A stretch of DNA of 64,000 nucleotides, taken from positions 110,794,001 through 110,858,000 of the forward strand of contig NC_043003.1 of the NCBI RefSeq assembly GCF_006345805.1. The letters are read 5' to 3'. Positions 2,750-57,052 of this stretch are shown here, in pieces. Positions within the stretch are counted from its first letter, which is position 1; each line of letters starts with the position of its first letter. The notes beneath the pieces were generated by a model that ran no database searches, was not told the origin of the DNA, and saw only the letters and a program-made list of their open reading frames with translations. Source of the DNA: Octopus sinensis. Taxonomy: Eukaryota. The translations under genes were made by a program, and so were the position numbers.

Positions 2750-4570
2750 TTACAAACACACACACACACACATATATATATGCATGTTTGCATGAAAGAC
2801 TGACAATGTGTTTGAGAATACACACACATACACACACATATACATGCACCATACATTTATACACGTATAAATGTATATAAGTACTCTCAAATATACATAC
2901 ATGCATGTATATATGTCTGTGTGCTCGCATGTGCTGTTATACGTGCACGCGCATATATATTTTATAGATGCTCACACGTTCATATATGTAATAATGGAAA
3001 AGGTAGAGGGAAAAGAGGGAGGGAAAAAAGAGAGAATATGAGACAAATACTCTTATCACATAAAGAAATACTGTTGAAAGAATCATTGAATTCTCATTTA
3101 TAGCTGCTTGGATATTATTTCTTTCTATAGTTGAAGAAAAAAATACATAACTTAGTTATCAATTACGTATGTACGTCAGTTTTCCACTATAGAGAGACGA
3201 ACAGCGAAAATAACAATAAAACGTTACAAGAAGATATATCGATAGGTAACAGCTGTGCTGGATATTTTCCTTGGATTTACCTTCGCAATTTGTCAGCCAT
3301 GTTCTCCATTATATGATTTCATACTGAGCGCACACATCGTACAGTGTGTCATCTTTTGAGGCAGCAGAATACGCATCTTCTCTATTCATGCAAGTAAATG
3401 AGTGTACTACTGCGAGCGAGTATCCTACGTATAGATTTTCTATAAATCGAGGTATTCATTGAGTGTGATGTATAGAAAAAGCAAGTATAAAAATCTGTTA
3501 AACACTTTTGTCCGTAGCATGATACAAACGTAGGCTTACACATGTATATGCAGAAGCACATACAGTCATAGACTGAGACACACAACTGCGTACAATGTAT
3601 ACATACATCGACGCATGAGGCTACATAGAACAATACACAGACGCACCCACCACACACATATATATATGCATGTTTGCATGAAAGACTGACAATGTGTTTG
3701 AGAATACACACACATACACACACATATACATGCACCATACATTTATACACGTATAAATGTATATAAGTACTCTCAAATATACATACATGCATGTATATAT
3801 GTCTGTGTGCTCGCATGTGCTGTTATACGTGCACGCGCATATATATTTTATAGATGCTCACACGTTCATATATGTAATAATGGAAAAGGTATGAGACAGA
3901 GAAAGAAGGAGTCAGACTAAAGAGGGAGGGAAAAAAGAGAGAATATGAGACAAATACTCTTATCACATAAAGAAATACTGTTGAAAGAATCATTGAATTC
4001 TCATTTATAGCTGCTTGGATATTATTTCTTTCTATAGTTGAAGAAAAAAATACATAACTTAGTTATCAATTACGTATGTACGTCAGTTTTCCACTATAGA
4101 GAGACGAACAGCGAAAATAACAATAAAACGTTACAAGAAGATATATCGATAGGTAACAGCTGTGCTGGATATTTTCCTTGGATTTACCTTCGCAATTTGT
4201 CAGCCATGTTCTCCATTATATGATTTCATACTGAGCGCACACATCGTACAGTGTGTCATCTTTTGAGGCAGCAGAATACGCATCTTCTCTATTCATGCAA
4301 GTAAATGAGTGTACTACTGCGAGCGAGTATCCTACGTATAGATTTTCTATAAATCGAGGTATTCATTGAGTGTGATGTATAGAAAAAGCAAGTATAAAAA
4401 TCTGTTAAACACTTTTGTCCGTAGCATGATACAAACGTAGGCTTACACATGTATATGCAGAAGCACATACAGTCATAGACTGAGACACACAACTGCGTAC
4501 AATGTATACATACATCGACGCATGAGGCTACATAGAACAATACACAGACGCACCCACCACACACATATAT
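2750..4570. repeat. Tandem duplication of an about 0.9-kb segment (offset 886-907 bp)
   Basis: Identical ORFs at 3131/4038 and 3382/4289. The copies differ mainly by one short indel near 3005/3891. Confidence 0.95.
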
Positions 4571-7339: not shown

Positions 7340-7501
7340 GGCGCAGGAGTGTCTGTATGGTTAGTAGTGTGCTTACCAACCATATAATTGCGGGTTAAGT
7401 GTCACTGCGTGGCACCCGGGGCAAGTGTCTTCTACTATAGCCTCGGGCCGACCAAAGCCTTGTATGTGGATTTGGCAGATGGAAACCGAACGAATCCCGA
7501 C

Positions 7502-7554
<53 letters not shown>

Positions 7555-7695
7555 CGTGTGTGCGTGTATTATGTTTGTGTATGTTTTTCTGTGTACGTGT
7601 GTTTATCTCCCCAATGTCGCTTGACAACCTATGCTGGTGCGTTTACAACCCCATAACTTAGTAGTTGGACTAAAGCGCCCGATAGAATAAGTATG
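7340..7695 (+). mobile_element. Octopus-type tRNA-derived SINE with internal microsatellite
   Basis: Head ggcgcaggagtg...tggtt, body gggcaagtgtcttctactatagcctcgggccgacc, internal (TG)n, then gcttgacaacc.atgctggtg. Confidence 0.8.
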
Positions 7696-17185: not shown

Positions 17186-17406
17186 ACTCTCTTTACTCTT
17201 TTACTTGTTTCAGTAATTTGACTCCGGCCATGGTGGAGCACCGCCTTTAGTCGAGCAAATCGACCCCTGGACTTATTCTTTGTAAGCCCAGTACTTATTC
17301 TATCGGTCTCTTTTGCCGAACCACTAAGTGACGGGGACATAAACACACCAGCATCGGTTGTCAAGCAATGCTAGGGGGGGGGGCAAATACAGACACACAA
17401 ACGCAG

Positions 17407-17442
<36 letters not shown>

Positions 17443-17614
17443 GCATATATACGACAGGCTTCTTTTAGTTTCCGTCTACCAAATCCACTCACAAGGCATT
17501 GGTCGGCCCAGGGCTATAGCAGAAGACACTTGCACAAGATGCCACGCAGTGGGACTGAACCCGGAACCATGTGGTTGGTTAGCAAGCTACTTACTACACA
17601 GCCACTCTTGCGCC
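17186..17614 (-). mobile_element. Full-length young octopus-type SINE
   Basis: Complete head, body and tail (gaaacaagtaaaagag). Nearly identical to the copy at 56640-57052. Confidence 0.9.
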
Positions 17615-22359: not shown

Positions 22360-25300
22360 CTGACAGATCCCGTCTTTTTCCCTTTCTTTTCGTTTCCTTC
22401 TCCGTATTTTATTCTCATTATTTCGAACTAATACAGACACAGTAAGCCTTGAAGAAAGGAAGAGGAGGAAAGGAAAAAAAAAAAAAAAAAATGTCCGGAG
22501 ATAAAACTATCAACAAAAAAAATACAGACGAATATAGATCTGCTAGTCTTAAGAAGCGGCGCTATGAGCAATGCTTACATGTAGTGAACCCTAGACTGAC
22601 AGATCCATCTCCTAATATAAGAATGGATGCTCGTCATGCTTCAAGGTCAACAAATCAAACAATAAACCGCATTGGTCATTGCGCGGATTACAAAAGACCA
22701 CGTACCCGAAAATTGAACCAAATCCTGATTGAAAAATCAGTTACTGGATCAAATCTTCCCAACACACAGGAGCTGGACGAACCCCACAACCGGAATATTC
22801 CAACAGATGGCCATCCATGCTCATCACCAAATCATCAAAAGAAAAAGAAGGAAAAATGGTCTAGGGAAGATAATAAAGAAGTTCTTGAGGCCTTCTACCA
22901 TGCCATATATTTCCCCACAGATAAGTCTAGCACTGTACAAGCATACTTAAACTGGAGACAGAAACACCCTGAAGTAAGACCCTACATAGACAGTAACAAG
23001 CTTGCCAATGTTAGAAGAAACATTATAAAAAAGAAATTACTGACTGAAGTAGAGATTGATCAGGTTAGACAAGCAATATCGGATAAAATGAACGAAGCTG
23101 CAGCTAGAGAAGATAATACAGAGGAAATGATTATAGACCAGCCCAGGGCGGATAAAAACGAAGAGAGGATTGAAAGAGTTAGTATAAGTGATAGGCAAAG
23201 TGAAATACGCCCTGAACCAATCATAAGCACTAAGACAGATGAGCATCAAATAGATAAAGAAAGTCACACAAATATTGACCCAACAGAACTACATGAGCTA
23301 AAAAATCAAATCATGATTGAATGGCTGAAAATTAAAGAAACCAGCATGGATGAGCGTGATACACTTCCTAAAATCCGCAACTCTAACCAAAACATGAAAA
23401 TAATTGGTAAAATCCGGCTTGCACTTAAGGATATAATTTCAGTTAATGATGTTGATATCACAAACCTCAACCACCTATACTATGCATCCGCGAAAATCTC
23501 AACGATCCTATGTGGTGTAAAGATTAGAAAACGGCAACAGTCCCACAAAAAGCCTTCTTGGCAAGAGCGTCTGCAACAACAAATTAAAATATTTAGATCT
23601 GACATTGAATATTTGAAAAACCTTAAGGCTCACAAGATTACCAAACCTACAAAAACCCAAAAATTACTGAAAAAATACAATATGAAAACTATACTTGATA
23701 TTGATGCCACCATAGAAACCATCAAACAAAAGGTATCTGCCAAAGCTGCCCGCATAGCGAGGTATGAAAAGCGTGTTAGATTTTTCAAGGACAACAACAT
23801 GTTCAAAAATAACACCAAGAATTTTTACAGGAAGATAGGAAAAACAGCGTTTACTGCAGGGTCTGTACCATCAAAAGAAGAAGTGCAGAGATTTTGGAAT
23901 AAAATCTGGGCAGAAGAAAAAACACACAACGAAAAGGCCCCCTGGATTGACAGAATATCTACAGAACTGGACCCCTTAGAAGAGCAAAAGTGGGAGGGTG
24001 TCAAGGTAGAAGATATAAGATCTGCTCTCAGGAGGTCAAGCAAATGGAAGTCTCCAGGAAGGATAAAATTCCTAACTTCTGGCTGAATGCCTTCCCAGAG
24101 AGCCATGAACTGCTAACAGAACTGTACAATGATGTTTTGCAACACCCTAGTAGGATGCCTCCTTGGCTAGTTAATGGGTTAACATTCCTGCTTCCAAAAA
24201 GTGAAGAAACAAATGAACCAAAAAACTATAGACCCATAACCTGCTTAACAACTATGTACAAAACACTAACATCTGTCCTGACGGAATATACCTATAGTTT
24301 TTTAACAGACAGCAGCATATTCCCTAATGAACAGAAAGGATGTAAACGTGGATCCTACGGCTGTAAAGACCAACTACTCATCAATAAGATGATCTTAGAA
24401 GATTGTCACAAACGACACAAAAACTTATCAATAGCCTGGATAGACTATAAAAAGGCTTTTGATAGCCTACCACATAGCTGGATTAGGAAATGCCTTGAAA
24501 TGTATAAGATAGCACCAACTCTGCGAAACTTCTTGACTGTAAGTATGAGATCATGGAGAACCACACTAACTCTGAACAGTGACAGTGAATCCCTAAATGC
24601 TGGTGATGTAAAAATTTCGTGTGGCATTTTCCAGGGTGACTCACTGTCACCACTCCTCTTTTGTTTATCCTTAATACCTCTCTCAAAGCTGCTCAATGAT
24701 GCGCAGTACGGGTATAAAATGTTTGATAAAAATATAAATCATCTCGTTTACATGGATGATTTAAAGCTTTTTGCAAAAAATGATCAACAACTCAAGGGCT
24801 TACTAGCGATAGTCAAACAATTCAGTGACGACATCAGAATGCAATTCGGCCTCGATAAATGTGCAAAGGCTACCTTTATCAAAGGAAAAATGACAGAAAC
24901 ATCTAACGTTAACCTTGACCAACAGAATGTCATAAAAGAACTAGACCCAGCGGAGAGCTACAAGTACCTAGGGATAATTGAAGGGAACGGAATAAGGCAT
25001 TCAGAGATGAAGGAAAGGATCAGGAGAGAATGCTATCGAAGAGTGAGAGCAATACTCAAGACAGAGCTGAATGCAAGAAACAGGATCGAAGCAATCAATG
25101 CATTAGCTATACCAGTCGTGACTTACAGTTTCAATATTGTTAACTGGTCAATTACTGAAATATGTCAGCTCGACAGAAAAATAAGGAAACTGTTGACAAT
25201 GCATAGAATGCACCACCCTAAGGCAGATACAGAACGACTCTATCTGCCAAGAAAAGAGGGAGGCCGTGGTCTTTTGCAACTGGCAATAACAATGAAGATT

Positions 25301-26521
25301 GCTACAATTGGCCTAGACACCTACCTGAAAAACTCTGAGGACTGGATGCTAAAACTTGTCTCAAAACATGAAAACAAGGAAGCATCATACTCAGTCACAA
25401 AACAGGCAAAGGAATATCTAAGTGAATTCCGAATACAACCAATTTCGGAATTAGAGATAGATATACAAGAAACAAGCACAGAAAAAGCTAGGCGCATGAA
25501 AACCCGTGCCAAAACTGCGGCCTTAGATATTCTGAATAATAAATGGCAAGAAAAACCTCTCTATGGCAAATACCCAAAGAGAGCGAATAATGCAGATATC
25601 GACAAAGCCCTGACCCATCAATGGCTAATGGCCTCTGGCTTAAAATCTGAAACAGAGGGGTTTATCATAGCAGCTCAAGATCAATGCCTACCAACAAGAA
25701 ACTACCAGGCCAACATATTAAAGATCAGAAGCAGTCCAACGTGTCGTGTATGCAAGCAACAAAATGAAACCATTGACCATGTGGTCTCCAAGTGCAGTCT
25801 TCTAGCGCCTACAGAGTATCTCAACAGGCACGATAGAGCTGCACAATATATTCACTGGGTAATCTGTAAAAACCTGGATTTGCCCCATGAAAAAAACTGG
25901 TGGGAACACAAACCACCCCCAGTGCTTGAAAATGACCACATCTCACTCCTCTGGAACTTCACCATTCAAACTGACAGGAAGATAGATGCAAATAGGCCAG
26001 ACATCATATTGAAAGACTTCAAACAAAGAACATGCCTCCTCATTGATATGACTGTCCCAATCGATATAAACGTATCTGATCAAGACCTACCAAAAACTGA
26101 GCAAATATAAAGATCTTGAAATAGAAATCAGCAAGATGTGGAAGCTGAAGACTAAAACAATACCTGTTGTCATAGGTGCCCTGGGAATGATAGCAAAGGG
26201 GCTGATAGCTACCTAACTCAGATACCAGGAAACCCAAAAATGGCAGAGATTCAAAAGATAGTGCTCATGGGAACTGCTCATATCCTACGCAAAATACTCT
26301 CTATGTAACCTCAAGGTTTAAAACAAACATAATTTCCAGTTTAAAAAAAAAAAAAAAAAATTTTTTTTTTTTAGACATTCATTAGTACAACATCCCCACC
26401 CCCCAAATATATGGCACACTAGGCATAACAACAACATGAACTTCCAACCCTGTTGTCTCTTGAGGTCTCTGGGTGAGACTTGGAGCCAACTTGTACAAAT
26501 ATAAAGCAAAAGTCAAACATA

Positions 26522-26585: not shown

Positions 26586-26929
26586 TAAGAGAACGACTTC
26601 GTCTATTCATAGATACTATAATATATACGACTTAGGATTTACTCACATTCACACACACACACGTGCGCACGCACACACACACACGCTACTATGCACCACC
26701 CCTCAAAAACCATACAAGAATAAATTCATACTCTAACTACCAATCAAAATAAACAAAATTCCCATGTGCCATAGAAAGCCGATACCCGACAGAGGAAAGC
26801 AACCTACGCTACACATGCGACACACAAGTTTAAAAGTAATACAGCCGAAGACATTAACAAAGCCCTATAACAAAACGTACTGATACCGTACAGTATCCAA
26901 TCCGCCAAAAACTTCGCCACACACCACCC

Positions 26930-28640
26930 CAACAGCGAAGAAACCAGATGGGAACCGAAGAAGGGAAATTTAGGTGACATGCGACAACTAGTTACTAAGT
27001 AACATTTCAGAAGAATCTTGATGCCATCCTCGTAGGACATTACCTTCTTGTTGCTCCCCAAATTCTTACATATCCAAATGAAAGTATTCCAGGTAATCAA
27101 ATCAAGTTCATCCAGTGTCGTCTTGAAGTTAACATTTTTAAGTACTTCTCTAATTTGGGGTCCGACAAAGATACCCATTTTCAACTTGTCCGTGTGATTT
27201 TTGGAAATATACACAAAACGTCTGGCATTTCTGTTCTCTAGTGTCTTTTACAAACTTTCATCAGTCGAAGCTTTATGAATAAAGGAGGCAATAGAACATT
27301 ACATGTATCTACAAGAGGTCTATTCGTGACGATAGATAGTCCTAGCTGGTATAATGTTCTTGTCTGCCAGTTTAATCCCGAATAATGTCTGTCACTTACT
27401 TTAACACGCCATAGACACAAGAAACAGCAGTATTTTCTGAAACCTGACTGCATTCCCATTAACATTCCAATGACTTTTATATCACCACATATTTTCTATG
27501 TGTATCTTTTATAGCCAATGGCATGAAGTAGAAGTTCCATATTCTCATATGATTCATGAAGATGAACGGAGTGTGCAATAGGTATGGAGGGCTTCAAATT
27601 ACCCTTATGGGGAAGTATATCTTTTAAACCTCATTTTGGAGAGTCAATAAACATACGCCACCCTGCAGGATCATGATTTCGTGATAAACATTTGAAAAGT
27701 CCATCGATGTTACTGCAAAAGCATAGCGGGCCTTCAACAGAAAAACACGTTTGTAGAACCACAATTCCCTGCCGAAAATAGGTTATACGAACACCGTACT
27801 CCAGCAGATACTTCCCCTTCAGCGTTGATGCCAACAGTTCTGATTTATCTTTTGAGAAGGATAGGTCTCTGATAAGATCACTCAGTTCAGTGAGGTTATC
27901 AGCCACGAAATCTTACTCAGCAGCACTATCGTGACATCATCATTTGCTGTTTTAATGCCATCATCTGGTGGAACTGGAATTGGCAGACTTCTCTTGTGAG
28001 GCGCAGGTCTCATTACAGAATCCAAATTGGGAAACATAATTTTGCTTCTATTCTTCATAAAAAATCCGGTGACATTTATTAAAAAAAATAATAGTCGTTA
28101 AAACGGTCTTTTGGCTCCCTCCATATCACTGGAGTGGCAAAAGACATAGACTTCTCTTTTATGAACCAGTCACGTAAGCCATATCAGCAAGCTGCTGAGC
28201 AGATAAAATGTGGTGCCCATATCTTGTCCTGATCTCCAAGAGGACAGTCACAGTATAGCTTAAAAACCTTTTTGATCGCTGGTGTTATTGTACTTTTTGA
28301 GCTTTCACAGACATAACAAAACATATCAGGACGATTTCTACAATGTCTTAGCATTGTTAACAATGTAAAACAAGTTAGAAGAGAGATGCAAACGGTTACA
28401 CTTATATTGAATTTGAGATGATTATTATGAATGGACAATTTGAAATGTTGGAATACTTATTTCACCGGACAAAACTTGATCGGTCAATTTAAGATGATGA
28501 AATATTACCTCTGACGTTTCCATGATGTAAATGAAATACACGCATACACGTCATTCATTGGACTTTCAATATGATGCATGAGCTAAAAGAAAAATAACTT
28601 TCTCATCTTGAAAACTGTACGTGAGGTCATAGAACTAACT
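26930..28640 (-). mobile_element. Chapaev-like (CMC superfamily) DNA transposon relic
   Basis: CRN.PDMFCYVC, LGDQDKIWAPH, WREPKD, LIRDLSFSKDKSELLAS, WRMFIDS, CGDIKV, KYCCFLCLW, LLPPL.IKL.LMK, KLKMGIFVGPQIR, CRMS.K. Many frameshifts. The superfamily call rests on recalled motifs. Confidence 0.7.
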
Positions 28641-33440: not shown

Positions 33441-33924
33441 ATTTATTATCTTTTAGTATATAAACATATTCTGTCCGCAAATGTCTGTGTGTGTGTATAC
33501 ACATACACGCACACACGTATATATATATACACATACACACACGCGCATATAAATATATAAATATATAATACCTATGTCTGTGTGAAAACTGATGATAACC
33601 AAAATACCTTTAACATTTTCAATGAGAAAATGGTGTTATGGCTACGTATTCGGACATGTGTTATGATACGTAAACAATTTTCCTTCTTCCATTCAAAATT
33701 GTTCGACTAAGTTAAAAGCGGCAGATTTTGACACCATCTTCTCACCAGGGTTCATTTTAAATTTTACAGCCGCCTCTGTATAAACGTTACGCAATCTTTG
33801 AATATTTGATAATCTAATCAGTTGATAAGTTTACTTTTAATTAAAAATTATATATCATCACATTTTTCGGCATCAACTTCGTCCATGTCGTCGACGTCCT
33901 CCCCATCCCTCCTTACTCATCACA

Positions 33925-34139
<215 letters not shown>

Positions 34140-34150
<11 letters not shown>

Positions 34151-34372
34151 ATGTTTATTAGGGCAACGAGAATGGTTAATACGCCGAGTAAAAAACTTAA
34201 CGGTATTTTGTCCGTCTGGTCCTTCTGCATTCAAATTTCCTCGAGGTCGTCTTTGATTTTCATCCTTTCGAGTTGGATAAAATAGGTGCCAGTTGAACAG
34301 TGGTGTCGATGTAATAGACTTAACACCTGCCTCCAAATTTGCTGGCCATGTGGCAAAAGTTGAAAATAATAA
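34140..34372 (-). mobile_element. Short interspersed repeat (SINE 3' body type)
   Basis: Reverse complement contains gacctcgaggaaatttgaatgcagaa...aagttttt, as in the 28741 and 61320 copies. Confidence 0.6.
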
Positions 34373-34616
34373 TATTGTCGTTGTTGTTCTTGTTGTTACC
34401 GTTATGGGAGACATCCTCTTCGTAGAATCTGATTGTTGTTCAATATTCTAAATGAGAAGTAGATAGACAGCCGACAACGGATGAAGGGTCGTTCTTTGTG
34501 ATACTTGTCCTGTTTTTCATTGGTTTCCTTCCTTGTTTGCATACTGAACTCATTTGTTCTCGAATATTATGTTGTTTACTGTTGGCGACGTCCACTATTA
34601 ATATATACACATCTAT

Positions 34617-34659
<43 letters not shown>

Positions 34660-36914
34660 ATGCATGTATATATTATTTATGTCCTTATTTAATTGAAAGC
34701 TACGCATCCATTTCCAAGTAAATACACATGCACACACATGCGCACACATATGTGCGCATATATATGAATGTAGACATACATAGATATATATGTTTATGCA
34801 TATATATATATATATAAATGTATATATATATATGCATATATATATGCATATATATGTATACATATATATATGTGTCTATATATGTATACATATATACATG
34901 TATATATATATATATATATTTGTATATATATTTATGTATGTGTATATATATATATGTTTATATATATATATATATAATATATATATATATAAATATATAT
35001 ATACATATGTATGTGTCTATGAATATATAGATATATGTATATATTTGTATGTATATATGTATGTTTGTATTTATATATATATATTCATAGAGCTTATGTA
35101 TGCACAAATGCAAGATTAGTGGACAGGTCAATAGTGCGATATTAGACGATTAAAAGCGAAGTGAGAAACATCTGCGTCCTTTTCTTTCGCTCTATATAGA
35201 CAGATAATCTAAGAAACAATTCTGATAGGTATTTAGGTAGCTACCTTACTAAGGAGACAGATAGACTCTCAGACAAATAGGAAGAATTTTAACCTGTAAT
35301 ATTACTCATCTGATGTTCCTATTAACACTTATATTTTTTATTGCTTAGTTCTGAAACAAGTACTTATATATAGAATATTTAGCATAGTTCTGTGTATGAT
35401 AATACGTCTGCTACTGGGTATCTTCATCGAAATCGCGGTGAGCTTACAACGGTAAGTTTATTAGAATTGAATTCGACTTTTAAAATAAACACCTATGCAT
35501 GTACTACGCTGATACATGTTTTTATTGCTTTTGTTTGTTATTTGTGTCGTTGCCATTGTTTATGAGGTTCAGTTTTAGTCGCAGAGGCATGGGGAGAAAT
35601 ATAATGAAGTTATAACCATACCGTCTTTTACATAAATACATAGGACTTATTCAGTTATATTTCATTTTCTTATTTAATATTGGTATGAATGAGAGATATT
35701 TGGCTGCTATTTCTAGCAACATGTTGATTGACCAATGTGGGTTCCGACTGCTTATTGTTGAATCATTGCCAATGAACCAACGCAGAAACTTATATTTTGC
35801 TCGCCATGACTACAAAAACGATATCAAATAACTCAAAACACACCCTGCTGTTTCCATACAAATCACGCAATTAATGATATACATATTAAATCAGTACATA
35901 TACAAATTAAGTCACATATGACATATCAACAGTAGTGAACTTTTGCGAGCACAAATCTAATCCATCAAACATATTTGCAGTCTAATCAATAAAGGCAATG
36001 AATGTTGTGATGTACCATCTGTTTACAACTATAATAATTGTTCAAACGGAAACTTGCTAATTTTCAAGAGTCTGATTTTTTTAGCATTGGATTACAGAAA
36101 TAGTTTCCCTTCTATTCTCAATTACTACTTTTTTTTATTTTGCATAACTTCTCTCTTATGTTTTATGGGATACCATGTTGATATTCCTCCATGTTTGAAT
36201 ATCAAGAACAATTATAGTATTCAAGAACAAATATAGACAATGATTAAAAAAAACAAGAAACAGAGAAACAAGAAGATAGATTAACAAAAGAGAAAGTATA
36301 ATTATTTTATAATGTAATTGATTTAATGCATTTCTCTTAATCTACAGTACACGGAAGTTATGTATTTTCATCCCTCAGACTTAAGCCACTTTACATTGTC
36401 TTAAGGCTCAGTCAGTACTTTGAGTAAAAATGTGCGAATTTTGACAAGATTTTATTGAAGCATACAAGTTTACTTACGCAACTAATCAAATCGTAAGTGC
36501 TATGTGTCTATATATGAACAAACTATATATGTAAGAATGTATATATAATATATACATACACAGTTTCCGTATGCCAAAACCGCTGACAAGGGTCGGGCAA
36601 GGCAACACTGGTAAGCAAGCCTCCTATTGCACAGCCACATCTGTGGTTATATATATCCTGAGTTACAACTATGTATAAAAATCAACCATATATATATATG
36701 AATATACATTGATATATATATATAACTACAAAATTAGAGAATGGAGAAATATACTTAAATCAGTAAAACATCAACTATCCGATGATACTCAATCCATACT
36801 TTAATACACCATTACATATGAGTAAAGGCAATACATAAAATGAAATGAAATATACAGTAATAGTAAAAAGATAAAGAGATATAAGTAAAAAATTTTCAAA
36901 TATGATATGCAAAT

Positions 36915-37040
36915 AAATCAAAACTGACAGCTGTTTCGGCAGTGAGGACAGTCATACCTCATTTAACCTATAAGCCATAAAGGCAGGTATAAATGAGGCA
37001 TTAACAAGGATGCCCCACGGCCTCTTCAGAGAATTAAATT
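36915..37040 (-). ncRNA. Type I hammerhead ribozyme motif, Penelope-terminal type
   Basis: Minus strand reads CU-CUGAAGA-GGC.GUGGGG[long hairpin]CCUCAC.GCC-GAAAC-AGCU-GUC-AG: full core, extended stem II, palindromic stem III ACAGCUGU and a GUC cleavage triplet. Confidence 0.75.
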
Positions 37041-37375
37041 AAATTTGTTATAATAGTGAAAAATATTATACAATCATATACATATAAATATAAAAATATA
37101 AAAATGTAAAATATAAAAACTTATACATCATAATGCTACACTTATATAATATAATACACATTTGTACAAAAAAGGAAGGTAAACAGAACAAAATAAAACA
37201 AAATATATAATAGAGTATATATTAATATCAATAAGTACCGATATTATACATATTTGGCTAATAGTTTTTTTTATATATAAAAAAAAAGGCTAACATATAT
37301 GGAGATGAAAAATAATAATTAAATCCGTGGTACAGTTCATAAGATTCTAAAGCTATAAAGTTAATAAAAATTACT

Positions 37376-37445
<70 letters not shown>

Positions 37446-37507
37446 TATAATAAAAAATAGATACAGTTAAGTTAGCACCAAGTCCATCCTTACAAGATCG
37501 AAATAAC

Positions 37508-37548
<41 letters not shown>

Positions 37549-37835
37549 ATATTTTATACACAGACACACGTACACACATACACAAACACGCACACATACA
37601 TATATATATATATAGATACATAGGTACTGACGCTCATTCATGCCTATCTCGCGACCTATTACTGCTACATATTTCTCATTATGTATAGATGTGTGTGATC
37701 ACCAGTTGCTCTTAACTGCGTCTATGTTTGCGTCTTTATGTTTGTACATACGTGTGTGCTCGTGTGCTGGTGACGATGGTCAAATATACAAAATACCTCT
37801 CTTTACTACTTCGCTAAACATAAAATGATACATAC

Positions 37836-38042
37836 CGTCACACCAAGAAAATTTGTTGCATTTAGAGCTGCAGTAACTTCCTCACGAGTAAAGACTAAAG
37901 GTGTATGTCGCCGTTTCCGCTTTCTCGCCAGACGATCAAATGCCTTTGCAATCACCCAGATTCCGTCAAATGCGTAACCATGGAATTTGCTATATTCGTT
38001 TCCTCGTTTTTTGTTGTATTTGTCCAGGTACGTTGCTGGCGT
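37836..38042 (-). CDS. GABBR2: GABA-B receptor subunit 2-like, next coding exon, 69 codons, phase 0/0
   Basis: Translates TPATYLDKYNKKRGNEYSKFHGYAFDGIWVIAKAFDRLARKRKRRHTPLVFTREEVTAALNATNFLGVT, matching the GABA-B2 motifs TP..Y...SKFHGYAYDGIWVIAK...MNETNFFGVT. Acceptor atctctgcAG and donor GTATGT give 207 nt, in frame with the previous exon. Absent from the ORF track. Confidence 0.94.
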
Positions 38043-39413: not shown

Positions 39414-41329
39414 TAGATATATAAATATAGATATACGTGTGTGTATAATCCAAGAACATAAAATCATTTCCTTCAAAGAGATGTAAAACATACAATTTTC
39501 CGATTCTTCAGTTAGATACCACAAAAGAAAAAGAAAAAAACTCGAACGTAGGAAATAGAGAAATTTATTCGAACTTTTTTATAATATAATTATACTATAA
39601 AAGATATAATATAATACGATATAATATAATATATGTAATAAATAAGTGAAATATATATCCTACGATTATTTCGACTGATATCCACTAGTGAATCTATAAA
39701 AATTCAAATTTATGCACATGAGTCTCCTCATATATCAATCTAAAATGTAGATACATACACATATGTATACACACACATACATACACATACTACATATATG
39801 CATCTAATCAAATTTAATAATGAGAGTATATAAATAATATCATAAAATGCCCTATCGTGATTAAAAACAGTTCTAGTGTAAGTACGTATTTCCAGTTTTT
39901 TTCCGTAAGCAATGAAAGTATAAGTATATAAATATTGATTTACTGTGGTATTTTCCTCTCATAAAGTAAATTTGTGTTTTTACTTGTTACTTACTTAGAA
40001 AAATATTTATATTAGTACGCATAAATAGATTAGAATAATTCTTAAATACAATTTTATATATTTTCGTATAATTGTGCATATATGAATATTTTTTCTAGAC
40101 TCTATAATAGTTAATATATATTACCATAGTATGTCCTTTCGAACTGCTATGCGCATAGAAATTATAGAATATTAAGATCATTGGCTTACTCTAATTTCTT
40201 TCCTTCTTAAGTAAAATGTTTATACTTTATTTATTTATATAATATTAACATTTTTATGTAAGAAATAGTATAGTTTATGATAATCGTAACTTTGTACATT
40301 TGTATAACACCGGCGTATTTAGTAGAAACTCTTGAATTAATGAATCGCTGATTAAAAGTTTTTTAATGAATTTACTATCTGAATAAAACATATCCTTGGT
40401 TATTTCTTCATAGTAATATACAGAGATTTTAAATGAAATATATTTTATACTCCAGCGTAATTCCTTAACATATTATATAGATTTTATTGTGATTATTTCA
40501 GATTAAAATATATTTAAATTAATATCATTAAGGATGCATAAAAATATTTTATGACTGTTGTAATTCTTGTGTTTATTAATTCATTTTAAAATTATTAACG
40601 CTCGCGCTTGTAAACATAGCTATACTTTAGATTAGTCAATTCAATGATATATGAGTCCTTCCATCAAATCTTGTCTACTATTTAGGCAAATATTACCCTG
40701 AGGAGACCCATATGCATAAATGTGGCTTTTTATAAATCCCCTTGGGATATGAGTCGAAATGCATTGTAGGATATATAAATATATATATATATACATGCTT
40801 TAATAATTTGTTAGATTATATATTTTATAGTGTAATTATATTATAATATAAATAAACTTTTAATATGTCGACTGTATTTCTATATTTCCTTATATATATA
40901 TATATATATATGATTGTATGTAAGTATGTACATGCAGAAAAATAGGGGAAGAGGGAGGAGACAGAGCTCACAGAATATTTATATGTAAATTGAGTTATTA
41001 TAAAACTAGTGTTTATCAGAACACATTTCATTTTGAAAATTAATAGGATGTAGAGTAAAATTCTCATTTGCGATCACCGGTTTTCAAACCAATGAATGTT
41101 CGCATCTTCCACTGCTGGTATCTCGCTGTTAATTTTATCAGGTCGATATCCTGCATAGAAGTTCCTCACATGTGATACCATTTCAGTGGTGGTGCTGTTT
41201 TTGTATAGCAACAAATATTCGTAATGGATATGGGGAAAGTTGAAAGGTAACCGAGCAGCAACAAATACATTTAAAATGAGATGTATTAATTTCTCAGTTA
41301 ATGTCTGTCCCCAAATTCTTGTGTGTGAA

Positions 41330-45516: not shown

Positions 45517-45775
45517 GTCACAGTATGGCAAGCGGTTTGTTTCCCAACCTCAACGCTACTGCGTATTATCTTGGGCGTCTTGTACGCGAGCCGTGGAAGG
45601 CCAAATACTTGTGAGTGGATTTGGCAGGCGGAAACTGAAAGACGCTTCCCGTATATTCAGGGTGCGATTGGTATGTCGTCGACATTGTACATTCTTAATT
45701 TCGCGCATGCGCATTGCTTGTCTTTTGTTTTGTCTACTACACAATGTGGAAGGATCATTTGAGCACCGTCTGTGA
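45517..45775 (+). mobile_element. Octopus-type SINE, diverged and truncated
   Basis: gtgagtggatttggcaggcggaaactgaaagacgc core with a degraded tRNA-like head. Confidence 0.65.
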
Positions 45776-45789
45776 GAAAAAACAGCACC

Positions 45790-46328
45790 ATGTCGCAATT
45801 CACTCAGCCAGAAATTTTGAATCGATATGCTGTACTGCTTGGCATTTGCGGAAGCTCCAATATTGATATTTCAGAGTGTTTGGGTGTCAATAGGTGGTTC
45901 CTGGAAGACCCTATGCCTCGCAACAGGACTCTGCACCATGCACAAAAGTAGGAGAGCTCACTCTGCGACCACATCACCCCTAACATCTGGCCACCGAACT
46001 CCAGTCTGCAACCCCCTATATTATTTTGTGTAGAGGCGCTGATGAGCGAGAGACCAACCAAATTCCTAGTAACACCAAAGAAATGTGAAGGCAAGCCTTA
46101 TGTCAGTATTCACTAACTCATATAAGGAGACCGTCCAGAATTGTTGCAGCTAATTCCGAAGTCGTCTGGAAGCCGTGGTTGAAGCCAATGCCGATTTTAT
46201 TGGATAGATTTATTATTTAGTATTTCAAGATATTTTTATGTAGTTTTGGTAATTATATCTCTTGAAATGTCACTGTTATTTTCCTTTTCGCGTAATTTAG
46301 ACGACAGTTTATGCACCACACCTTGCAC
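45790..46328 (+). mobile_element. Tc1/mariner fragment of the same family as 32336
   Basis: HITPNIWPPNS..CNP.Y...V and RLEAVVEANADFIG*. TIR-like end ttatgcaccacaccttg. Confidence 0.75.
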
Positions 46329-46415: not shown

Positions 46416-46573
46416 CACACAAACATATACGTATAGTTTTCTTTAATAAATGTTTATGTTATATAATAATATTATGTTATATTATATTCATAGTATATCA
46501 TGCAATATAATATTAAATTATTGGATTCTCAATAGTATCTCTCAATAAAATTTAACTTTATATATATATATAT

Positions 46574-46753
46574 AGGCGCAGGAGTGGCTGTATGGTAAGT
46601 AGCTTGCTTACCAACAACATGTTCCCGGGTTCAGTCCTACTTCGTGGCACCTTCGGCAAGAGTCATCTACCATAACCTCGGGCCGTCCAAAGCCTTGTGA
46701 GTGGATTTGGTAGAAGGAAACTGAAAGAAGCCCGTCGTATATGTATATGTATG

Positions 46754-46809
<56 letters not shown>

Positions 46810-47065
46810 TATATGTATATGTATATATACATATACGACGGGCTTCTTCCATATGTATATACGTGTGTGTGTGTTTGTGTTTGTCCCCCCAACATTGCTT
46901 GACAACAGATGCTGGTGTGTTTACTTCCCCGTAACTTAGCGGTTCAGCATAAAGACTTATAGTATAAGTACTAGGCTTAGAAGGAATAATCTATGAGGTC
47001 GATTTGCTCGACTATAAAAGCGGTGCTCCAGCATGGCGCAGTCAAATGGCTTGAACAAGTAAAAG
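46574..47065 (+). mobile_element. Full-length octopus-type SINE
   Basis: ggcgcaggagtggctgtatggtaagtagc head, internal palindromic microsatellite flanked by gaagcccgtcg/cgacgggcttc, tail ggcttgaacaagtaaaagag. Confidence 0.9.
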
Positions 47066-52740: not shown

Positions 52741-53926
52741 TTACATTATATAATTAGGGCTTAGTAAAATAAATTACTTTGCCACATACTGAACTTAGTA
52801 GAAATAGCAGCCAAAAAAATTTTTCTTAGCATTTCTACTACTTAAAGAAAAATTCTCTCAGATAATGTTTACTCTAGACAGCTCACAAAGGTTTGGGGGT
52901 AAATACAGAAAAATATCACAAGTACATAGATCGTTTGAGTACGTCAACGTTTCAAGATTAGCCAAATAAAATCAGCATTTCTTTCGTCAGCTCAAAATTT
53001 CTTAATTTGGATTTGGAAACACTAAAAAGAAGGAACTTTACCTATCAGCGAACTTGTCGCTTCAGATGAACCACTCCAACTAAACAGTGTCAACAAATTC
53101 AAAATGCGCAGGCGTAAAATTCTGCACTCCCCATTCCACCAACGTGGTCTATCTAGCAAACATCATATTTTAAGCGCGAGAACCGAGGCAGTATGACCGA
53201 GAGAAATGAATTATAATATCAACAATTGAGGGTAAAATTAATTAATTAATCAATTTCACCAAGTGTTCAGTATGTAAAAGGACCATTTAAGGCGAATTCA
53301 AAATATTACATTATATAATTAGGGCTTAGTAAAATAAATTACTTTGCCACATACTGAACTTAGTAGAAATAGCAGCCAAAAAAATTTTTCTTAGCATTTC
53401 TACTACTTAAAGAAAAATTCTCTCAGATAATGTTTACGTGGGTGGAATGGGGAGTGCAGCATTTTATGCCTGCGCATTTTGAATTTGTTGACTCTGTTTA
53501 GTTGGAGTGGTTCATCTGAAGCGACAAGTTCGCTGATAGGTAAAGTTCCTTCTTTTTAGTGTTTCCAAATCCAAATTAAGAAATTTTGAGCTGACGAATG
53601 AAATGCTGATTTTATTTGGCTAATCTTGAAACGTTGACGTACTCAAACGATCTATGTACTTGTGATATTTTTCTGTATTTACCCCCAAACCTTCGTGAGC
53701 TGTCTAGAGTAAACATTATCTGAGAGAATTTTTCTTTAAGTAGTAGAAATGCTAAGAAAAATTTATTTTCGCTGCTATTTCTACTAAGTTCAGTATGTGG
53801 CAAAGTAATTTATTTTACTAAGCCCTAATTATATAATGTAATATTTTGAATTCGCCTTAAATGGTCCTTTTACATACTGAACACTTGGTGAAATTGATTA
53901 ATTAATTAATTTTACCCTCAATTGTT

Positions 53927-55130: not shown

Positions 55131-55454
55131 GGACGAAGGCAACAAAGGGGGAGAAGAGAGAGAAAGAGGAATTAAAGAGGGGAGAAGAGAGAGTGCGTGT
55201 CAAGAATTTGACTTGTGAGTGCAAAGTAAGAAAGACAGAAATGTGAGAGAGTGGGGGAAGAGTAGACCAAAGAATCAGAGGCAAGAAAAGAGAAAAGGAG
55301 GAGAAGTAGAGAGAGAGAGAAGGGGACTGATCAAAGTAGAATACAAAGTGTGAAAGGCCACCCCACCACATCCATTACCCCACCAGTATCATCCTCTCTC
55401 TACACTCCACTCTCTCTCCGTACCTTTCTTTAACCACGCCATCAGAACATCACC

Positions 55455-55725
55455 CCTCTGCTAAAATTAAATCTTTGGCTGTTTGGTAATCCGGTTTCAG
55501 TTTCACTGCGTGGCACTTTTGGCATGTCTTCTACTATAGCCTCGGGCGAACCAAAGCCACGTGAGTGGATTTGGTAGCCGGAAACTGAAAAAATCCCGCC
55601 GTCTCTTTGTCTCAATCTTCTTCCCCCCCCTATCGCTTGACAACCGATGCTGGTGTGTTTACTTCCCCGCAACTCAGCGGTTTAGCAAAAAGTGACCGAT
55701 AGAATAATTATGAGGCTTACAATGA
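55455..55725 (+). mobile_element. Octopus-type SINE, partial
   Basis: cactgcgtggcac...tcttctactatagcctcgggc...gtgagtggatttggtag...cgcttgacaaccgatgctggtgtgtttac. Confidence 0.8.
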
Positions 55726-56639
55726 ATAAGCCCTAAGGTTCATTATGTTCATTGATTTACACCAATCAAAATTGACTGATATGTCGACTAGTAGCATATT
55801 CTCATTGTTTGGTTCATCTTATTTCTTATATTTCTTATATGGTGTAAATGCGTATATGTAATTTTACGTTAGATATTAAATGCATTCGGAATATTTTTAC
55901 ATACATCAACATATACTGTTCTTGGAGTCACCGTCATTCCGAAGTCACAGGGCACTCCGTATGTCACAAAATACGCCTACATCTACGCTAGCGCTTGTGT
56001 CTGAGCGGCACACTACTGAACCGACCGATCATTTCTTTTAAGCCTGAGTAACCTTGGTAATTTCTCAACAGCTTCTACGTTATTCTTCATGTCATTTTAC
56101 TCCGACTAATGATTAAGTCTCTAGAAAAAACGATGCATTTCCTGTCTAGATGAAAAATGCAATGCTAACATGATTTTGTCGAATTCATAATTGCCGGTAG
56201 CAATAAGTATTGTAGTTCTTATTTGTTAGTTAAATTTATATAATTTGAAAATAAGTAATATATAACGCTAAAATAGTTTGAGAAAAACAAATTAATGCAT
56301 TATTTGATTAATATCGGTGCATTCATGTGTCAGGTGTTGCTGCCATATTAATTGGGAACCCATTACAGGAGATATCAGTAACCGGTAGGTTGTGTAGTTA
56401 ATATCTCCTAATATTTACTAAACATTGTCTGCAGAAATTTTACCCCTGTAATAAATAATTATGCGGAACTGTTTGACGTATATGTAAGTGACGTGACACC
56501 CTTCTAAAATCAATACTAAACATAAAATCGGTTCAATAAATTGTTTCTTCTTGCTTGAAGATTAACAAGATCATGTTATGGGGAAGTAAACCACGAAAAC
56601 AAGAGCGTCAAAAAGAATAATATTAGTTTTCATATATGA

Positions 56640-57052
56640 TAGGAGTGGCTGTCTGGTAAGTAGCTTGCTAACCAACCACATGGTTCCGGGTTCAGTCCCA
56701 CTGCGTGGCATCTTGGGCAAGTGTCTTCTGCTATAGCCCCGGGCCGACCAATGCCTTGTGAGGGGATTTGGTAGACGGAAACTGAAAGAAGCCTGTCGTA
56801 TATATGTATATATATATATATGTGTGTGTGCGTGTGTGTGTGTGTATGTGTTTGTGTGTTTGTCTCCCTAGCATTGCTTGACAACCGATGCTGGTGTGTT
56901 TACGTCCCCGTCACTTAGCGGTTCGGCAAAAGAGAACGATAGAATAAGTACTGGGCTTACAAAGAATAAGTCCAGGGGTCGATTTGCTCGACTAAAGGCG
57001 GTGCTCCACCATGGCCGGAGTCAAATGACTGAAACAAGTAAAAGAGTAAAAG
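56640..57052 (+). mobile_element. Full-length young octopus-type SINE
   Basis: Complete head, body and tail. Near-identical to the 17186-17614 copy. Confidence 0.9.

What the first reader, a model, noticed from the sequence alone, without database searches (positions are those of the whole stretch)
36915..37040. Canonical hammerhead on the sense strand of the GABA-B2 intron, about 800 nt after an exon
Seen: the minus strand carries a complete core CUGAAGA...GAAAC-AGCU-GUC. Stem II is unusually long: GGC.GUGGGG/CCUCAC.GCC closes an inner AUGCCUCAUUUA/UAAAUGAGGUAU helix. Stem III has an 8-nt palindrome (ACAGCUGU). Stem I has 2 bp, a UU/UU loop, then further pairs. It lies on the same strand as the receptor exons, downstream of the donor at 37835. 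Established: PLE termini carry such motifs, and intronic self-cleaving ribozymes exist in vertebrate genes. Inference: it could cut the nascent GABA-B2 pre-mRNA in a very long intron and affect splicing, or yield a truncated ectodomain-only transcript. It may also be a silent PLE remnant that needs dimerisation.
Basis: partly seen in the sequence, partly recalled or inferred. Interest (0 to 1): 0.7.

Follow-up and report, generated by a model that had tools for sequence, protein, structure and literature searches.

The report
Lone hammerhead ribozyme motif in intron
A complete hammerhead self-cleaving-RNA motif really does sit on the sense strand of a GABA-B2 receptor intron, but it looks like a single leftover copy of the retrotransposon-type hammerheads common in animal genomes, built to cut only in pairs and missing from the same intron of a related species, so it is probably an inert passenger rather than a gene regulator.

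Summary
On the minus strand, 37040..36915 carries a type-I hammerhead. It has the core CUGAAGA / GAAA / GUC (C17 = 36926), a G10.1-C11.1 pair and an 85-nt helix II. Helix III is 2 bp plus the palindromic loop AGCU. Helix I is 2 bp, a UU/UU loop, then more pairs. It lies about 800 nt into a sense-strand intron of at least 37.8 kb, after a GABA-B2 exon. Motifs this good are expected 0.003 times per shuffled window. Rfam does not call it, which I put down, without a direct test, to the long helix II and weak helix I. Its helix-II base, core and helix III match a compact natural type-I hammerhead found in a metagenome repeat family.

The features point to the animal retrotransposon class (Penelope-like element or retrozyme). 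As a monomer, helix III is predicted to form about 0.1% of the time, while a dimer is 7 kcal/mol more stable. The window holds no second copy, no tandem array and no nearby RT or GIY-YIG remnant. In the only relative recovered, the intron appears to lack the roughly 4 kb stretch that holds the motif.

Best reading: a solo, probably weak or inactive retroelement-derived hammerhead. A regulatory role is not excluded but has no support. Genome copy number could not be tested.

The parts
36915..37040 (-). Whole type-I hammerhead motif: helix I 5' strand, core, helix II, core, helix III, cleavage site and helix I 3' strand
   Evidence: Sequence read directly. Descriptor hit 37029..36926. Fold z = -4.09.
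37023..37029 (-). Core box C3-A9, CUGAAGA (N7 = A)
36938..37022 (-). Helix II, 85 nt. Base GGCC/UGCC with a C10.4/U11.4 mismatch, then GUGGGG/CCUCAC, internal loops, a 12-bp inner helix (37001-36990 with 36965-36954) and an apical stem-loop. Predicted -38 kcal/mol on its own.
   Evidence: I15
36934..36937 (-). Core box G12 A13 A14 A15.1 (GAAA)
36927..36934 (-). Helix III: A15.1-U16.1 and C15.2-G16.2 closing the tetraloop AGCU. The whole ACAGCUGU is an 8-nt palindrome able to form an intermolecular 8-bp helix.
   Evidence: Pair probabilities 0.001-0.002 in the monomer. The dimer MFE uses this helix.
36925..36926 (-). Predicted scissile bond: after C17 (36926) and before A1.1 (36925)
   Evidence: Position follows from hammerhead numbering. 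Cleavage was not tested.
36915..36925 (-). Helix I 3' strand, AGUUUUGAUUU
   Evidence: Pairs with 37030-37040 at 8 of 11 positions (7 of the first 10), with only 2 consecutive pairs at the junction.
37030..37040 (-). Helix I 5' strand, AAUUUAAUUCU
37836..38042 (-). Upstream GABA-B2 exon (TPATYLDKYNKK...NFLGVT). GT donor at 37835-37834. The motif starts 796 nt downstream.
   Evidence: The orthologous exon is in P0001/L001.
33744..37749 (-). About 4.0 kb of intron containing the motif, with no counterpart in the relative's contig, which has about 213 nt between the two flanking homologous blocks
   Evidence: The orthology of the 33548-33743 block is inferred from 70-75% identity over about 200 nt and from it being the only match in the window.

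Best explanation
This is a solitary copy of an animal type-I hammerhead ribozyme. It belongs to the class carried by Penelope-like elements and non-LTR retrozymes, and it lies as a passenger in a repeat-rich, lineage-specific stretch of a very long GABA-B2 intron.

Its catalytic core is intact. The architecture, however, is the kind that cleaves efficiently only when two copies pair through the palindromic helix III (ACAGCUGU), as in tandem repeats. Here there is one copy, and helix I is weak. The usual 4-bp helix II with its loop 2 is replaced by an 85-nt hairpin, so the usual loop 1 / loop 2 tertiary contact has no obvious equivalent.

The expected behaviour is that the motif is transcribed within the pre-mRNA but cleaves slowly or not at all at cellular Mg2+, with no designed effect on the receptor transcript.

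Shown: the motif, its non-random nature, the strand and intron position, the single copy in the window, the predicted monomer-versus-dimer energetics, and the absence from one relative's contig.

Inferred: retroelement origin, low activity and neutrality.
For: - All invariant core positions, G10.1-C11.1 and a GUC site are present.
- The expected chance count is 0.003 per window.
- Helix III (2 bp plus a palindromic tetraloop) matches the published description of canonical metazoan type-I hammerheads that act as dimers (PMC4209133 section 4; PMC6155905; PMC3088659 Fig. S8 legend).
- A long helix II, a short helix I, G10.1-C11.1 and a palindromic 15.2-16.2/loop 3 are listed there as traits of PLE-associated motifs.
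- The string GGCC...UGCC-GAAAC-AGCU-GUC is identical to a compact natural type-I hammerhead in a dispersed repeat family (L006 963-1007). Rfam RF00163 scores that one at 28.3 bits, E = 0.004.
- The monomer ensemble gives helix III pair probabilities of 0.001-0.002, and the MFE sequesters C3-G5. The homodimer is 7.1 kcal/mol below two monomers and forms the intermolecular ACAGCUGU helix.
- There is no second copy or tandem array in 64 kb.
- The relative's contig jumps from the exon flank to a block about 4 kb further on in the window.
- PLEs are an annotated TE order in Octopus vulgaris (PMC13282606).
- About 43% of Xenopus retrozyme copies lie in introns, so intronic copies are ordinary.
Against: - No other member of the putative family was recovered anywhere. 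Two metagenome scans found none. A six-frame plus flanking-ORF protein search gave 0 hits. Exact ORF look-ups found nothing on record. Repeat status in the source genome is therefore untested.
- No RT or GIY-YIG remnant appears in ORFs of at least 40 aa between 29 and 45 kb, and no clear target-site duplication is present. The link to PLEs or retrozymes rests on ribozyme architecture alone.
- The PLE 'extra nucleotide between A9 and G10.1' is absent.
- An 85-nt helix II is not described for these families in the papers read.
- Absence in one relative at about 80% identity cannot separate insertion here from deletion there.
- Secondary-structure energies do not model the hammerhead's tertiary fold, so monomer activity is not excluded.
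Confidence: 0.62

Rival explanations
1. Chance look-alike. A stable inverted repeat (hairpin) in AT-rich intron happens to be flanked by CUGANGA on one side and GAAA-N8-UC on the other. On this reading there is no ribozyme ancestry and no activity.
For: - Rfam finds no hammerhead here even at E<=10.
- Helices I and III contribute only 2 consecutive pairs each.
- The window has 31 CUGANGA heptamers and three other weak hammerhead-like cores: -52990, +40698 and +47845.
- The criteria for 'as good as the target' were chosen after seeing it.
- If many windows were screened, a 0.003-per-window event will turn up.
Against: - The 0.003-per-window figure already ignores three further features: the 12-bp inner helix, the G10.1-C11.1 identity, and the palindromic loop (about 0.08 more by base composition).
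- All 20 nt of helix-II base, core and helix III are identical to a natural repeat-borne hammerhead.
- Animal genomes commonly hold thousands of such motifs (PMC4209133), so the prior for a real relic is high.
Confidence: 0.15
2. Domesticated cis-acting intronic ribozyme. The motif cleaves nascent GABA-B2 pre-mRNA about 910 nt into a >=37.8 kb intron. This would lower productive splicing or trigger early termination, tuning receptor output in the way proposed for the amniote intronic hammerheads.
For: - The motif is on the sense strand with an intact core.
- The downstream intron is at least 37.8 kb. Even slow cleavage would have minutes to act before the acceptor is made (inference from typical Pol II rates).
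- Conserved intronic type-I hammerheads exist in amniote genes (PMC6155905).
Against: - The motif is not present in the orthologous intron stretch of the one relative recovered.
- Helix III is predicted unformed in the monomer, and no cis partner lies within the window.
- Loop 2 is replaced by a long helix, so the tertiary contact needed for fast cleavage at low Mg2+ (PMC3088659) has no evident equivalent.
- The motif is embedded among microsatellites and repeat fragments.
- The cut product would lack a poly(A) tail, so an 'ectodomain-only' protein isoform is unlikely.
Confidence: 0.07
3. Member of a so-far undescribed, possibly active cephalopod family of hammerhead-bearing non-autonomous elements. 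In this family the long helix II is a family trait, a rod-like RNA body built into the ribozyme. This copy would be one dispersed monomer, and processing would occur at tandem copies elsewhere.
For: - Helix II is a well-formed, mostly paired 85-nt hairpin rather than a random insertion.
- The non-microsatellite unit 36725-37075 (about 350 nt) falls in the size range reported for metazoan retrozyme monomers (170-400 nt by my recollection of PMC7229834; the passages read here state only 330-350 bp for the axolotl repeats). It is bracketed by TA-rich tracts with a weak direct repeat (D2).
- Solo monomers are the evenly dispersed form in Xenopus.
Against: - No second copy exists in 64 kb.
- No related sequence was found in any searchable collection.
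- The flanking repeat is only 72% identical and of low complexity.
Confidence: 0.12

Closest known systems
Canonical metazoan type-I hammerheads of satellite or retrozyme repeats (newt satellite 2, Schistosoma Sm-alpha, axolotl HHR_Amex2, mussel retrozymes; Rfam RF00163)
   Same: Type-I topology and a full core. G10.1-C11.1. Helix III of 2 bp capped by a palindromic tetraloop ('similar to invertebrate HHRs', PMC7229834). Dimer-capable palindrome. The helix-II base and helix III are identical to the compact L006 hammerhead.
   Different: No tandem repeat. Helix II is 85 nt instead of about 4 bp plus a loop. Helix I is 2 bp plus an internal loop instead of about 6 bp. No recognisable loop 1 / loop 2 contact. 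Below every Rfam reporting threshold.
Hammerheads in the pseudo-LTRs of Penelope-like elements (min-HHRs and the Drosophila/rotifer/shrimp/mosquito variants; Cervera & de la Pena 2014)
   Same: Larger-than-usual helix II with an irregularity near its base, and a short, poorly defined helix I. Conserved G10.1-C11.1. A small palindromic helix III. Most copies in a genome occur as single dispersed motifs, thought to be truncated elements. Low activity is expected as a monomer.
   Different: No PLE ORF or pLTR is detectable nearby. No unpaired nucleotide between A9 and G10.1. Helix II is far longer than the 6-8 bp reported.
Conserved intronic hammerheads of amniotes (RECK, CTCL, DTNB introns)
   Same: A type-I hammerhead on the sense strand of an intron in a protein-coding gene, probably of retroelement origin.
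   Different: Those are conserved across whole vertebrate classes. This one is missing from the only relative that could be compared, and it sits in repeat-rich sequence.
Discontinuous hammerhead of mammalian Clec2 3' UTRs
   Same: A hammerhead in which one helix carries a very large insertion, located inside a host gene transcript.
   Different: That one is type III with the insertion in helix I (150-1500 nt) and lies in a 3' UTR. Here the enlarged element is helix II, and the site is intronic.

Membership tests
Hammerhead ribozyme (motif level) | Conserved core C3 U4 G5 A6 N7 G8 A9 / G12 A13 A14 / A15.1-U16.1 / H17 | tested here: met
   CUGAAGA 37029-37023; GAAA 36937-36934; U16.1 at 36927; C17 at 36926
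Hammerhead ribozyme (motif level) | Three helices radiating from the core, with G10.1-C11.1 at the base of helix II | tested here: met
   Helix II is strong (P = 0.99 for 10.1-11.1). Helix I: P about 0.66 for its first two pairs. Helix III can be drawn (2 bp) but has P about 0.001 in the monomer.
Hammerhead ribozyme (motif level) | Site-specific self-cleavage after H17 | not testable with these tools
   Needs in vitro transcription and cleavage assays, or RNA end mapping.
Rfam Hammerhead_1 (RF00163) | Covariance-model score at or above gathering (34 bits) | tested here: not met
   No hit at gathering or at E<=10 on 801 nt. The same model gives 28.3 bits to a compact hammerhead with the same core and helix III. 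I attribute the miss to the 77-nt expansion of loop 2 and the weak helix I.
Dimer-type animal hammerhead | Short helix III (1-2 bp) with a palindromic loop, so that two copies form an extended helix III | tested here: met
   ACAGCUGU is an exact palindrome. The cofold MFE is -95.3 against 2 x -44.1 kcal/mol and contains the intermolecular helix.
Non-LTR retrozyme | Head-to-tail tandem repeats, each with a type-I hammerhead (330-350 bp in the axolotl passages read; the 170-400 nt range across animals is my recollection of PMC7229834) | tested here: not met
   No tandem array, no second copy in the window. A 'solo monomer' status cannot be judged without the family consensus.
Penelope-like element hammerhead | Located in a pseudo-LTR flanking an RT plus GIY-YIG ORF | tested here: not met
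   No RVT_1 or GIY-YIG hit among 135 ORFs of at least 40 aa in 29-45 kb. The only RT in the window is a LINE-type ORF at 23990-26110. Degraded or truncated remnants could be missed.
Penelope-like element hammerhead | Extra unpaired nucleotide between A9 and G10.1 | tested here: not met
   A9 (37023) is followed directly by G10.1 (37022), which pairs with C11.1 (36938).
Penelope-like element hammerhead | Enlarged helix II, short helix I, and palindromic 15.2-16.2 / loop 3 | tested here: met
   compared with PMC4209133 sections 5, 6 and 9
Penelope-like element / retrozyme hammerhead | Many related copies per genome forming consensus families with covariation | not testable with these tools
   The source genome and cephalopod assemblies are not searchable by DNA here. 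Indirect attempts found nothing.
Domesticated intronic hammerhead (amniote type) | Conservation at the orthologous intron position across species | tested here: not met
   The relative's contigs L001-L003 align to 38212-37750 and then to 33743-33548. The 4 kb between, which holds the motif, has no counterpart, and no hammerhead core lies in the relative's downstream sequence. This rests on one relative of unknown identity.

The most novel reading that the evidence does not exclude
A cephalopod-specific functional hammerhead whose helix II has been expanded into a long, stable hairpin. It would still cleave in cis within the nascent GABA-B2 pre-mRNA, for example with the extended helix II or a protein partner substituting for the missing loop-loop contact. 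That would give a ribozyme-based brake on a neuronal receptor gene with a very long intron.
Probability: 0.04. Interest if true: 0.75.

Novelty: new member of a known kind. Interest (0 to 1): 0.27.

Why it matters
If the best explanation holds, this is one more dispersed copy of a well-known class of retroelement-borne ribozymes. Its value is mainly as an annotation. It flags that hammerhead-bearing elements probably exist in this (apparently cephalopod) genome. In the papers I could search, none describes such motifs for octopus.

It also shows that standard Rfam scanning misses variants with an expanded helix II. A family-level survey could reveal whether long-helix-II hammerheads form a distinct lineage.

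Only if the motif proved active as a monomer and conserved among close relatives would it bear on the open question of what intronic hammerheads do to host transcripts.

Tried and rejected
- **Rfam** on the whole window at gathering, and on 36600-37400 at E<=10: no hammerhead. The only hits were low-complexity miRNA-like noise outside the motif.
- **Self-BLAST** of the motif and flanks against the window, and an approximate search for GAAACAGCUGUC: no second copy.
- **TRF**: only microsatellites.
- **Metagenome scan, family-specific pattern**: 0 hits.
- **Metagenome scan, looser long-helix-II pattern**: 8 hits. Seven belong to an unrelated repeat family whose hammerhead has a short helix II. 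The pattern matched across a helix-III insertion. One hit (L011) looks random.
- **Six-frame translations** of the motif plus nearby spurious ORFs, used as a protein query to fish other copies or orthologous introns out of Logan-type assemblies: none at E<=0.1.
- **Exact look-up** of three window ORFs: not on record, so the source genome is not in that index.
- **Literature search** for the SRA and ENA accessions, to name the relative and the metagenome: nothing.
Replaced by 135 stop-free ORFs: no RT or GIY-YIG.
- **tRNA scan**: none, so there is no tRNA-like feature in the hairpin.
- **miRNA precursor or other known RNA in helix II**: considered and rejected, because no Rfam match overlaps 36938-37022 at E<=10.
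- **Part of the dispersed SINE-like repeat**: considered and rejected. The nearest fragment (36562-36655) is about 270 nt away, and other copies of that repeat carry no hammerhead.

Full report
**What is there**

Reading the minus strand gives this sequence, 5' to 3':

AAUUUAAUUCU-CUGAAGA-GGCCGUGGGG...CCUCACUGCC-GAAA-C-AGCU-G-U-C|AGUUUUGAUUU, spanning 37040..36915.

- The core boxes are CUGAAGA (37029-37023) and GAAA (36937-36934).
- The cleavage triplet is GUC, with C17 at 36926.
- G10.1 (37022) pairs with C11.1 (36938).
- The first ten positions of helix II give nine pairs, with a C10.4/U11.4 mismatch.
- An inner 12-bp helix joins 37001-36990 to 36965-36954 (also I15).
- ACAGCUGU is an exact palindrome.
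- Helix I is A-U, G-C, then a UU/UU loop, then U-A, U-A, G.U, A-U, then U/U, then U-A, U-A.

**Is it more than chance?**

I wrote a type-I hammerhead descriptor. It required an exact core, at least 3 consecutive helix II pairs, at least 2 helix III pairs, and helix I scored over 10 positions. I ran it on the window and on 300 dinucleotide-preserving shuffles.
- Hits as good as the target had at least 8 of 10 helix II pairs, at least 2 consecutive pairs and at least 7 of 10 pairs in helix I.
- Such hits occurred 0.003 times per shuffled window.
- This figure gives no credit for the inner helix, the G-C identity at 10.1/11.1 or the palindromic loop.
- The 146-nt segment folds with z = -4.09.

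The thresholds were set after seeing the motif, and real DNA is not a shuffle. I therefore keep a chance origin at about 0.15 rather than near zero.

Rfam does not report the motif, either at gathering or at E<=10 on an 801-nt slice. The probable reason is visible. RF00163 is a 45-position model with a 4-bp helix II and a 6-bp helix I. A compact natural hammerhead (L006 963-1007, GCCAUG-CUGAUGA-GGCCUAAAAAUGCC-GAAAC-AGCU-GUC-CAUGGC) reaches only 28.3 bits. The window motif shares that RNA's helix-II base (GGCC...UGCC), core and helix III exactly. It differs in having 77 nt where the other has UAAAAA, and in having a much weaker helix I.

**Gene context**

Two exons lie on the minus strand, at 42832-42665 and 38042-37836, with GT at 37835.
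- Together they match GABA-B2 chains in the PDB at E = 1e-24, against 1e-8 for GABA-B1.
- No further exon was found between 1 and 37835. The motif therefore lies 796-921 nt into a sense-strand intron of at least 37.8 kb.
- The surroundings are microsatellites and a diverged fragment of a dispersed SINE-like repeat at 36562-36655.
- Further away lies a LINE-type retrotransposon.

**What kind of hammerhead**

The literature describes most animal hammerheads as type I. Their helix III is 1-2 bp, capped by a small palindromic loop. Such motifs cleave poorly alone and well as dimers, typically when tandem copies are transcribed together (PMC4209133; PMC6155905; PMC3088659; PMC7229834).

Motifs associated with Penelope-like elements additionally tend to have four traits:
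- an enlarged helix II;
- a short, ill-defined helix I;
- a conserved G10.1-C11.1;
- palindromic 15.2-16.2 and loop 3.

The window motif has all of these. It lacks the extra nucleotide between A9 and G10.1.

ViennaRNA calculations agree with the dimer design.
- In the monomer ensemble the two helix III pairs have probability 0.001-0.002.
- The MFE pairs C3-G5 with CAG in and just after the helix III strand.
- The homodimer MFE is -95.3 kcal/mol against -88.2 for two monomers, and it contains the intermolecular ACAGCUGU helix.
- These energies ignore tertiary structure, so they are indicative only.

Fast cleavage at cellular Mg2+ normally needs a contact between loop 2 and a loop in helix I (PMC3088659). 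Here loop 2 is replaced by a long helix. I therefore infer low activity.

**Is it part of an element, and is it conserved?**

Within the window it is a single copy.
- BLAST finds nothing else.
- There is no tandem array.
- There is no other GAAACAGCUGUC, even with two mismatches in a hammerhead context.
- No RVT_1 or GIY-YIG signal appears among 135 stop-free ORFs of at least 40 aa between 29 and 45 kb.
- The non-microsatellite unit around the motif (about 36725-37075) is some 350 nt long and bracketed by TA-rich tracts. These share only a weak 72% direct repeat, which suggests an insertion but does not prove one.

For conservation, a protein search with the exon peptides found one orthologous exon ORF (P0001, 83% identity), carried on Logan contigs from three sequencing runs.
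- The contigs align to 38212-37750 at about 80% identity.
- After 213 nt with no match, they align to 33743-33548 at 70-75%.
- That block is the only match in the window.
- If it is orthologous, about 4.0 kb of the window's intron, including the motif, has no counterpart in the relative.
- The relative's downstream sequence contains no hammerhead core.
- Whether this is an insertion here or a deletion there cannot be told. The relative's identity is unknown.

**Attempts to find the family elsewhere**

All of these failed.
- A specific metagenome pattern gave 0 hits.
- A looser pattern recovered only an unrelated hammerhead-bearing repeat.
- A six-frame plus flanking-ORF protein query gave nothing.
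- Exact ORF look-ups showed that the source genome is not indexed.

Copy number in the source genome, which is the single most informative fact, therefore remains untested.

**Mechanism and verdict**

The best-supported reading (0.62) is a solo, retroelement-derived, dimer-type hammerhead. It is transcribed as part of the intron but cleaves little or not at all.

Intronic copies of such elements are commonplace. In Xenopus about 43% of retrozyme copies overlap introns, though they are modestly depleted there. Penelope-like elements are an annotated TE order in Octopus vulgaris. None of the papers I could search describes hammerheads in octopus.

A cut transcript would also lack a poly(A) tail, so an ectodomain-only protein is unlikely.

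A related possibility (0.12) is that the motif represents an undescribed family in which the long helix II is a family trait. This would make it a new variant rather than a new member.

I file it as a new member of a known kind, of modest interest.

Noticed in passing
window 52940-52996, minus strand: A second hammerhead-like motif lies on the gene's sense strand, in the intron upstream of the 42.8 kb exon: UUUGAG-CUGACGA-AAGA...UCUU-GAAAC-GUUGAC-GUA|CUCAAA. Helix I is 6 bp and helix III is 3 bp, but the pair at 10.1-11.1 is an atypical A-U. The expected count is 0.03 per shuffled window. The fold z is only -0.67, and Rfam gives no hammerhead hit at E<=10. Probably chance.
   Followed up: partly
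window 40698-40768, plus strand: A weak hammerhead-like core (CUGAGGA ... GAAA) lies antisense to the gene, next to a TA microsatellite. Helix III is wobble-rich and helix I is 2 bp. It accounts for 11 of the 17 loose descriptor hits only because the microsatellite offers many alternative ends. Probably chance.
   Followed up: partly
L004-L010 (ENA metagenome assembly ERZ1740055), e.g. L006 963-1007 and L010 4005-4110: A dispersed repeat family (70-85% identity over 150-300 nt) from an unidentified organism carries type-I hammerheads with the same ACAGCUGU helix III. In L006 the motif is compact (RF00163 28.3 bits, below gathering). In most other copies I read ACAGCU...AGCUGU as a 6-bp helix III closing a 60-70-nt insertion. 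That reading is from inspecting the sequence and was not tested by folding. These variants escape Rfam.
   Followed up: partly
window 33744-37749 versus L001 934-1147: There is a roughly 4 kb length difference in the intron between the window and a related species' contig. The window-specific part is rich in microsatellites and repeat fragments.
   Followed up: partly
window 22449-26110, plus strand: A LINE-type retrotransposon lies antisense to the gene in the same intron. It has two long open frames, of 545 aa (no Pfam hit) and 706 aa (RVT_1 E = 5.5e-28, plus weak zf-RVT). The open frames suggest a fairly young copy. It is not a Penelope-like element, as no GIY-YIG domain was found.
   Followed up: partly
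window 2752-4570: A tandem duplication of about 900 bp: 2752-3663 and 3637-4570 are 97.3% identical. It was first noticed from repeated ORF translations and from paired pattern hits 907 nt apart.
   Followed up: partly
window 7373-7627, 17197-17496, 45556-45798, 46567-46895, 55442-55672, 56630-57045, and a fragment at 36562-36655: Copies of one dispersed SINE-like repeat, usually abutting microsatellites. They are recognisable from recurring spurious ORF peptides such as ...QGFGRPEA... and ...SFSFRLPNPLT... and from weak BLAST matches. The same repeat ends the relative's contig L001 (1409-1516).
   Followed up: no
window 26804-28438, minus strand: A run of ORFs (84, 91, 75 and 136 aa) looks like a decayed gene of a mobile element; one has a cysteine-rich N-terminal segment...CYVCESSK...DQDKIWAPHFIC.... 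The three ORFs I scanned (84, 91 and 136 aa) had no Pfam match at E<=0.01; the 75-aa ORF was not scanned.
   Followed up: no
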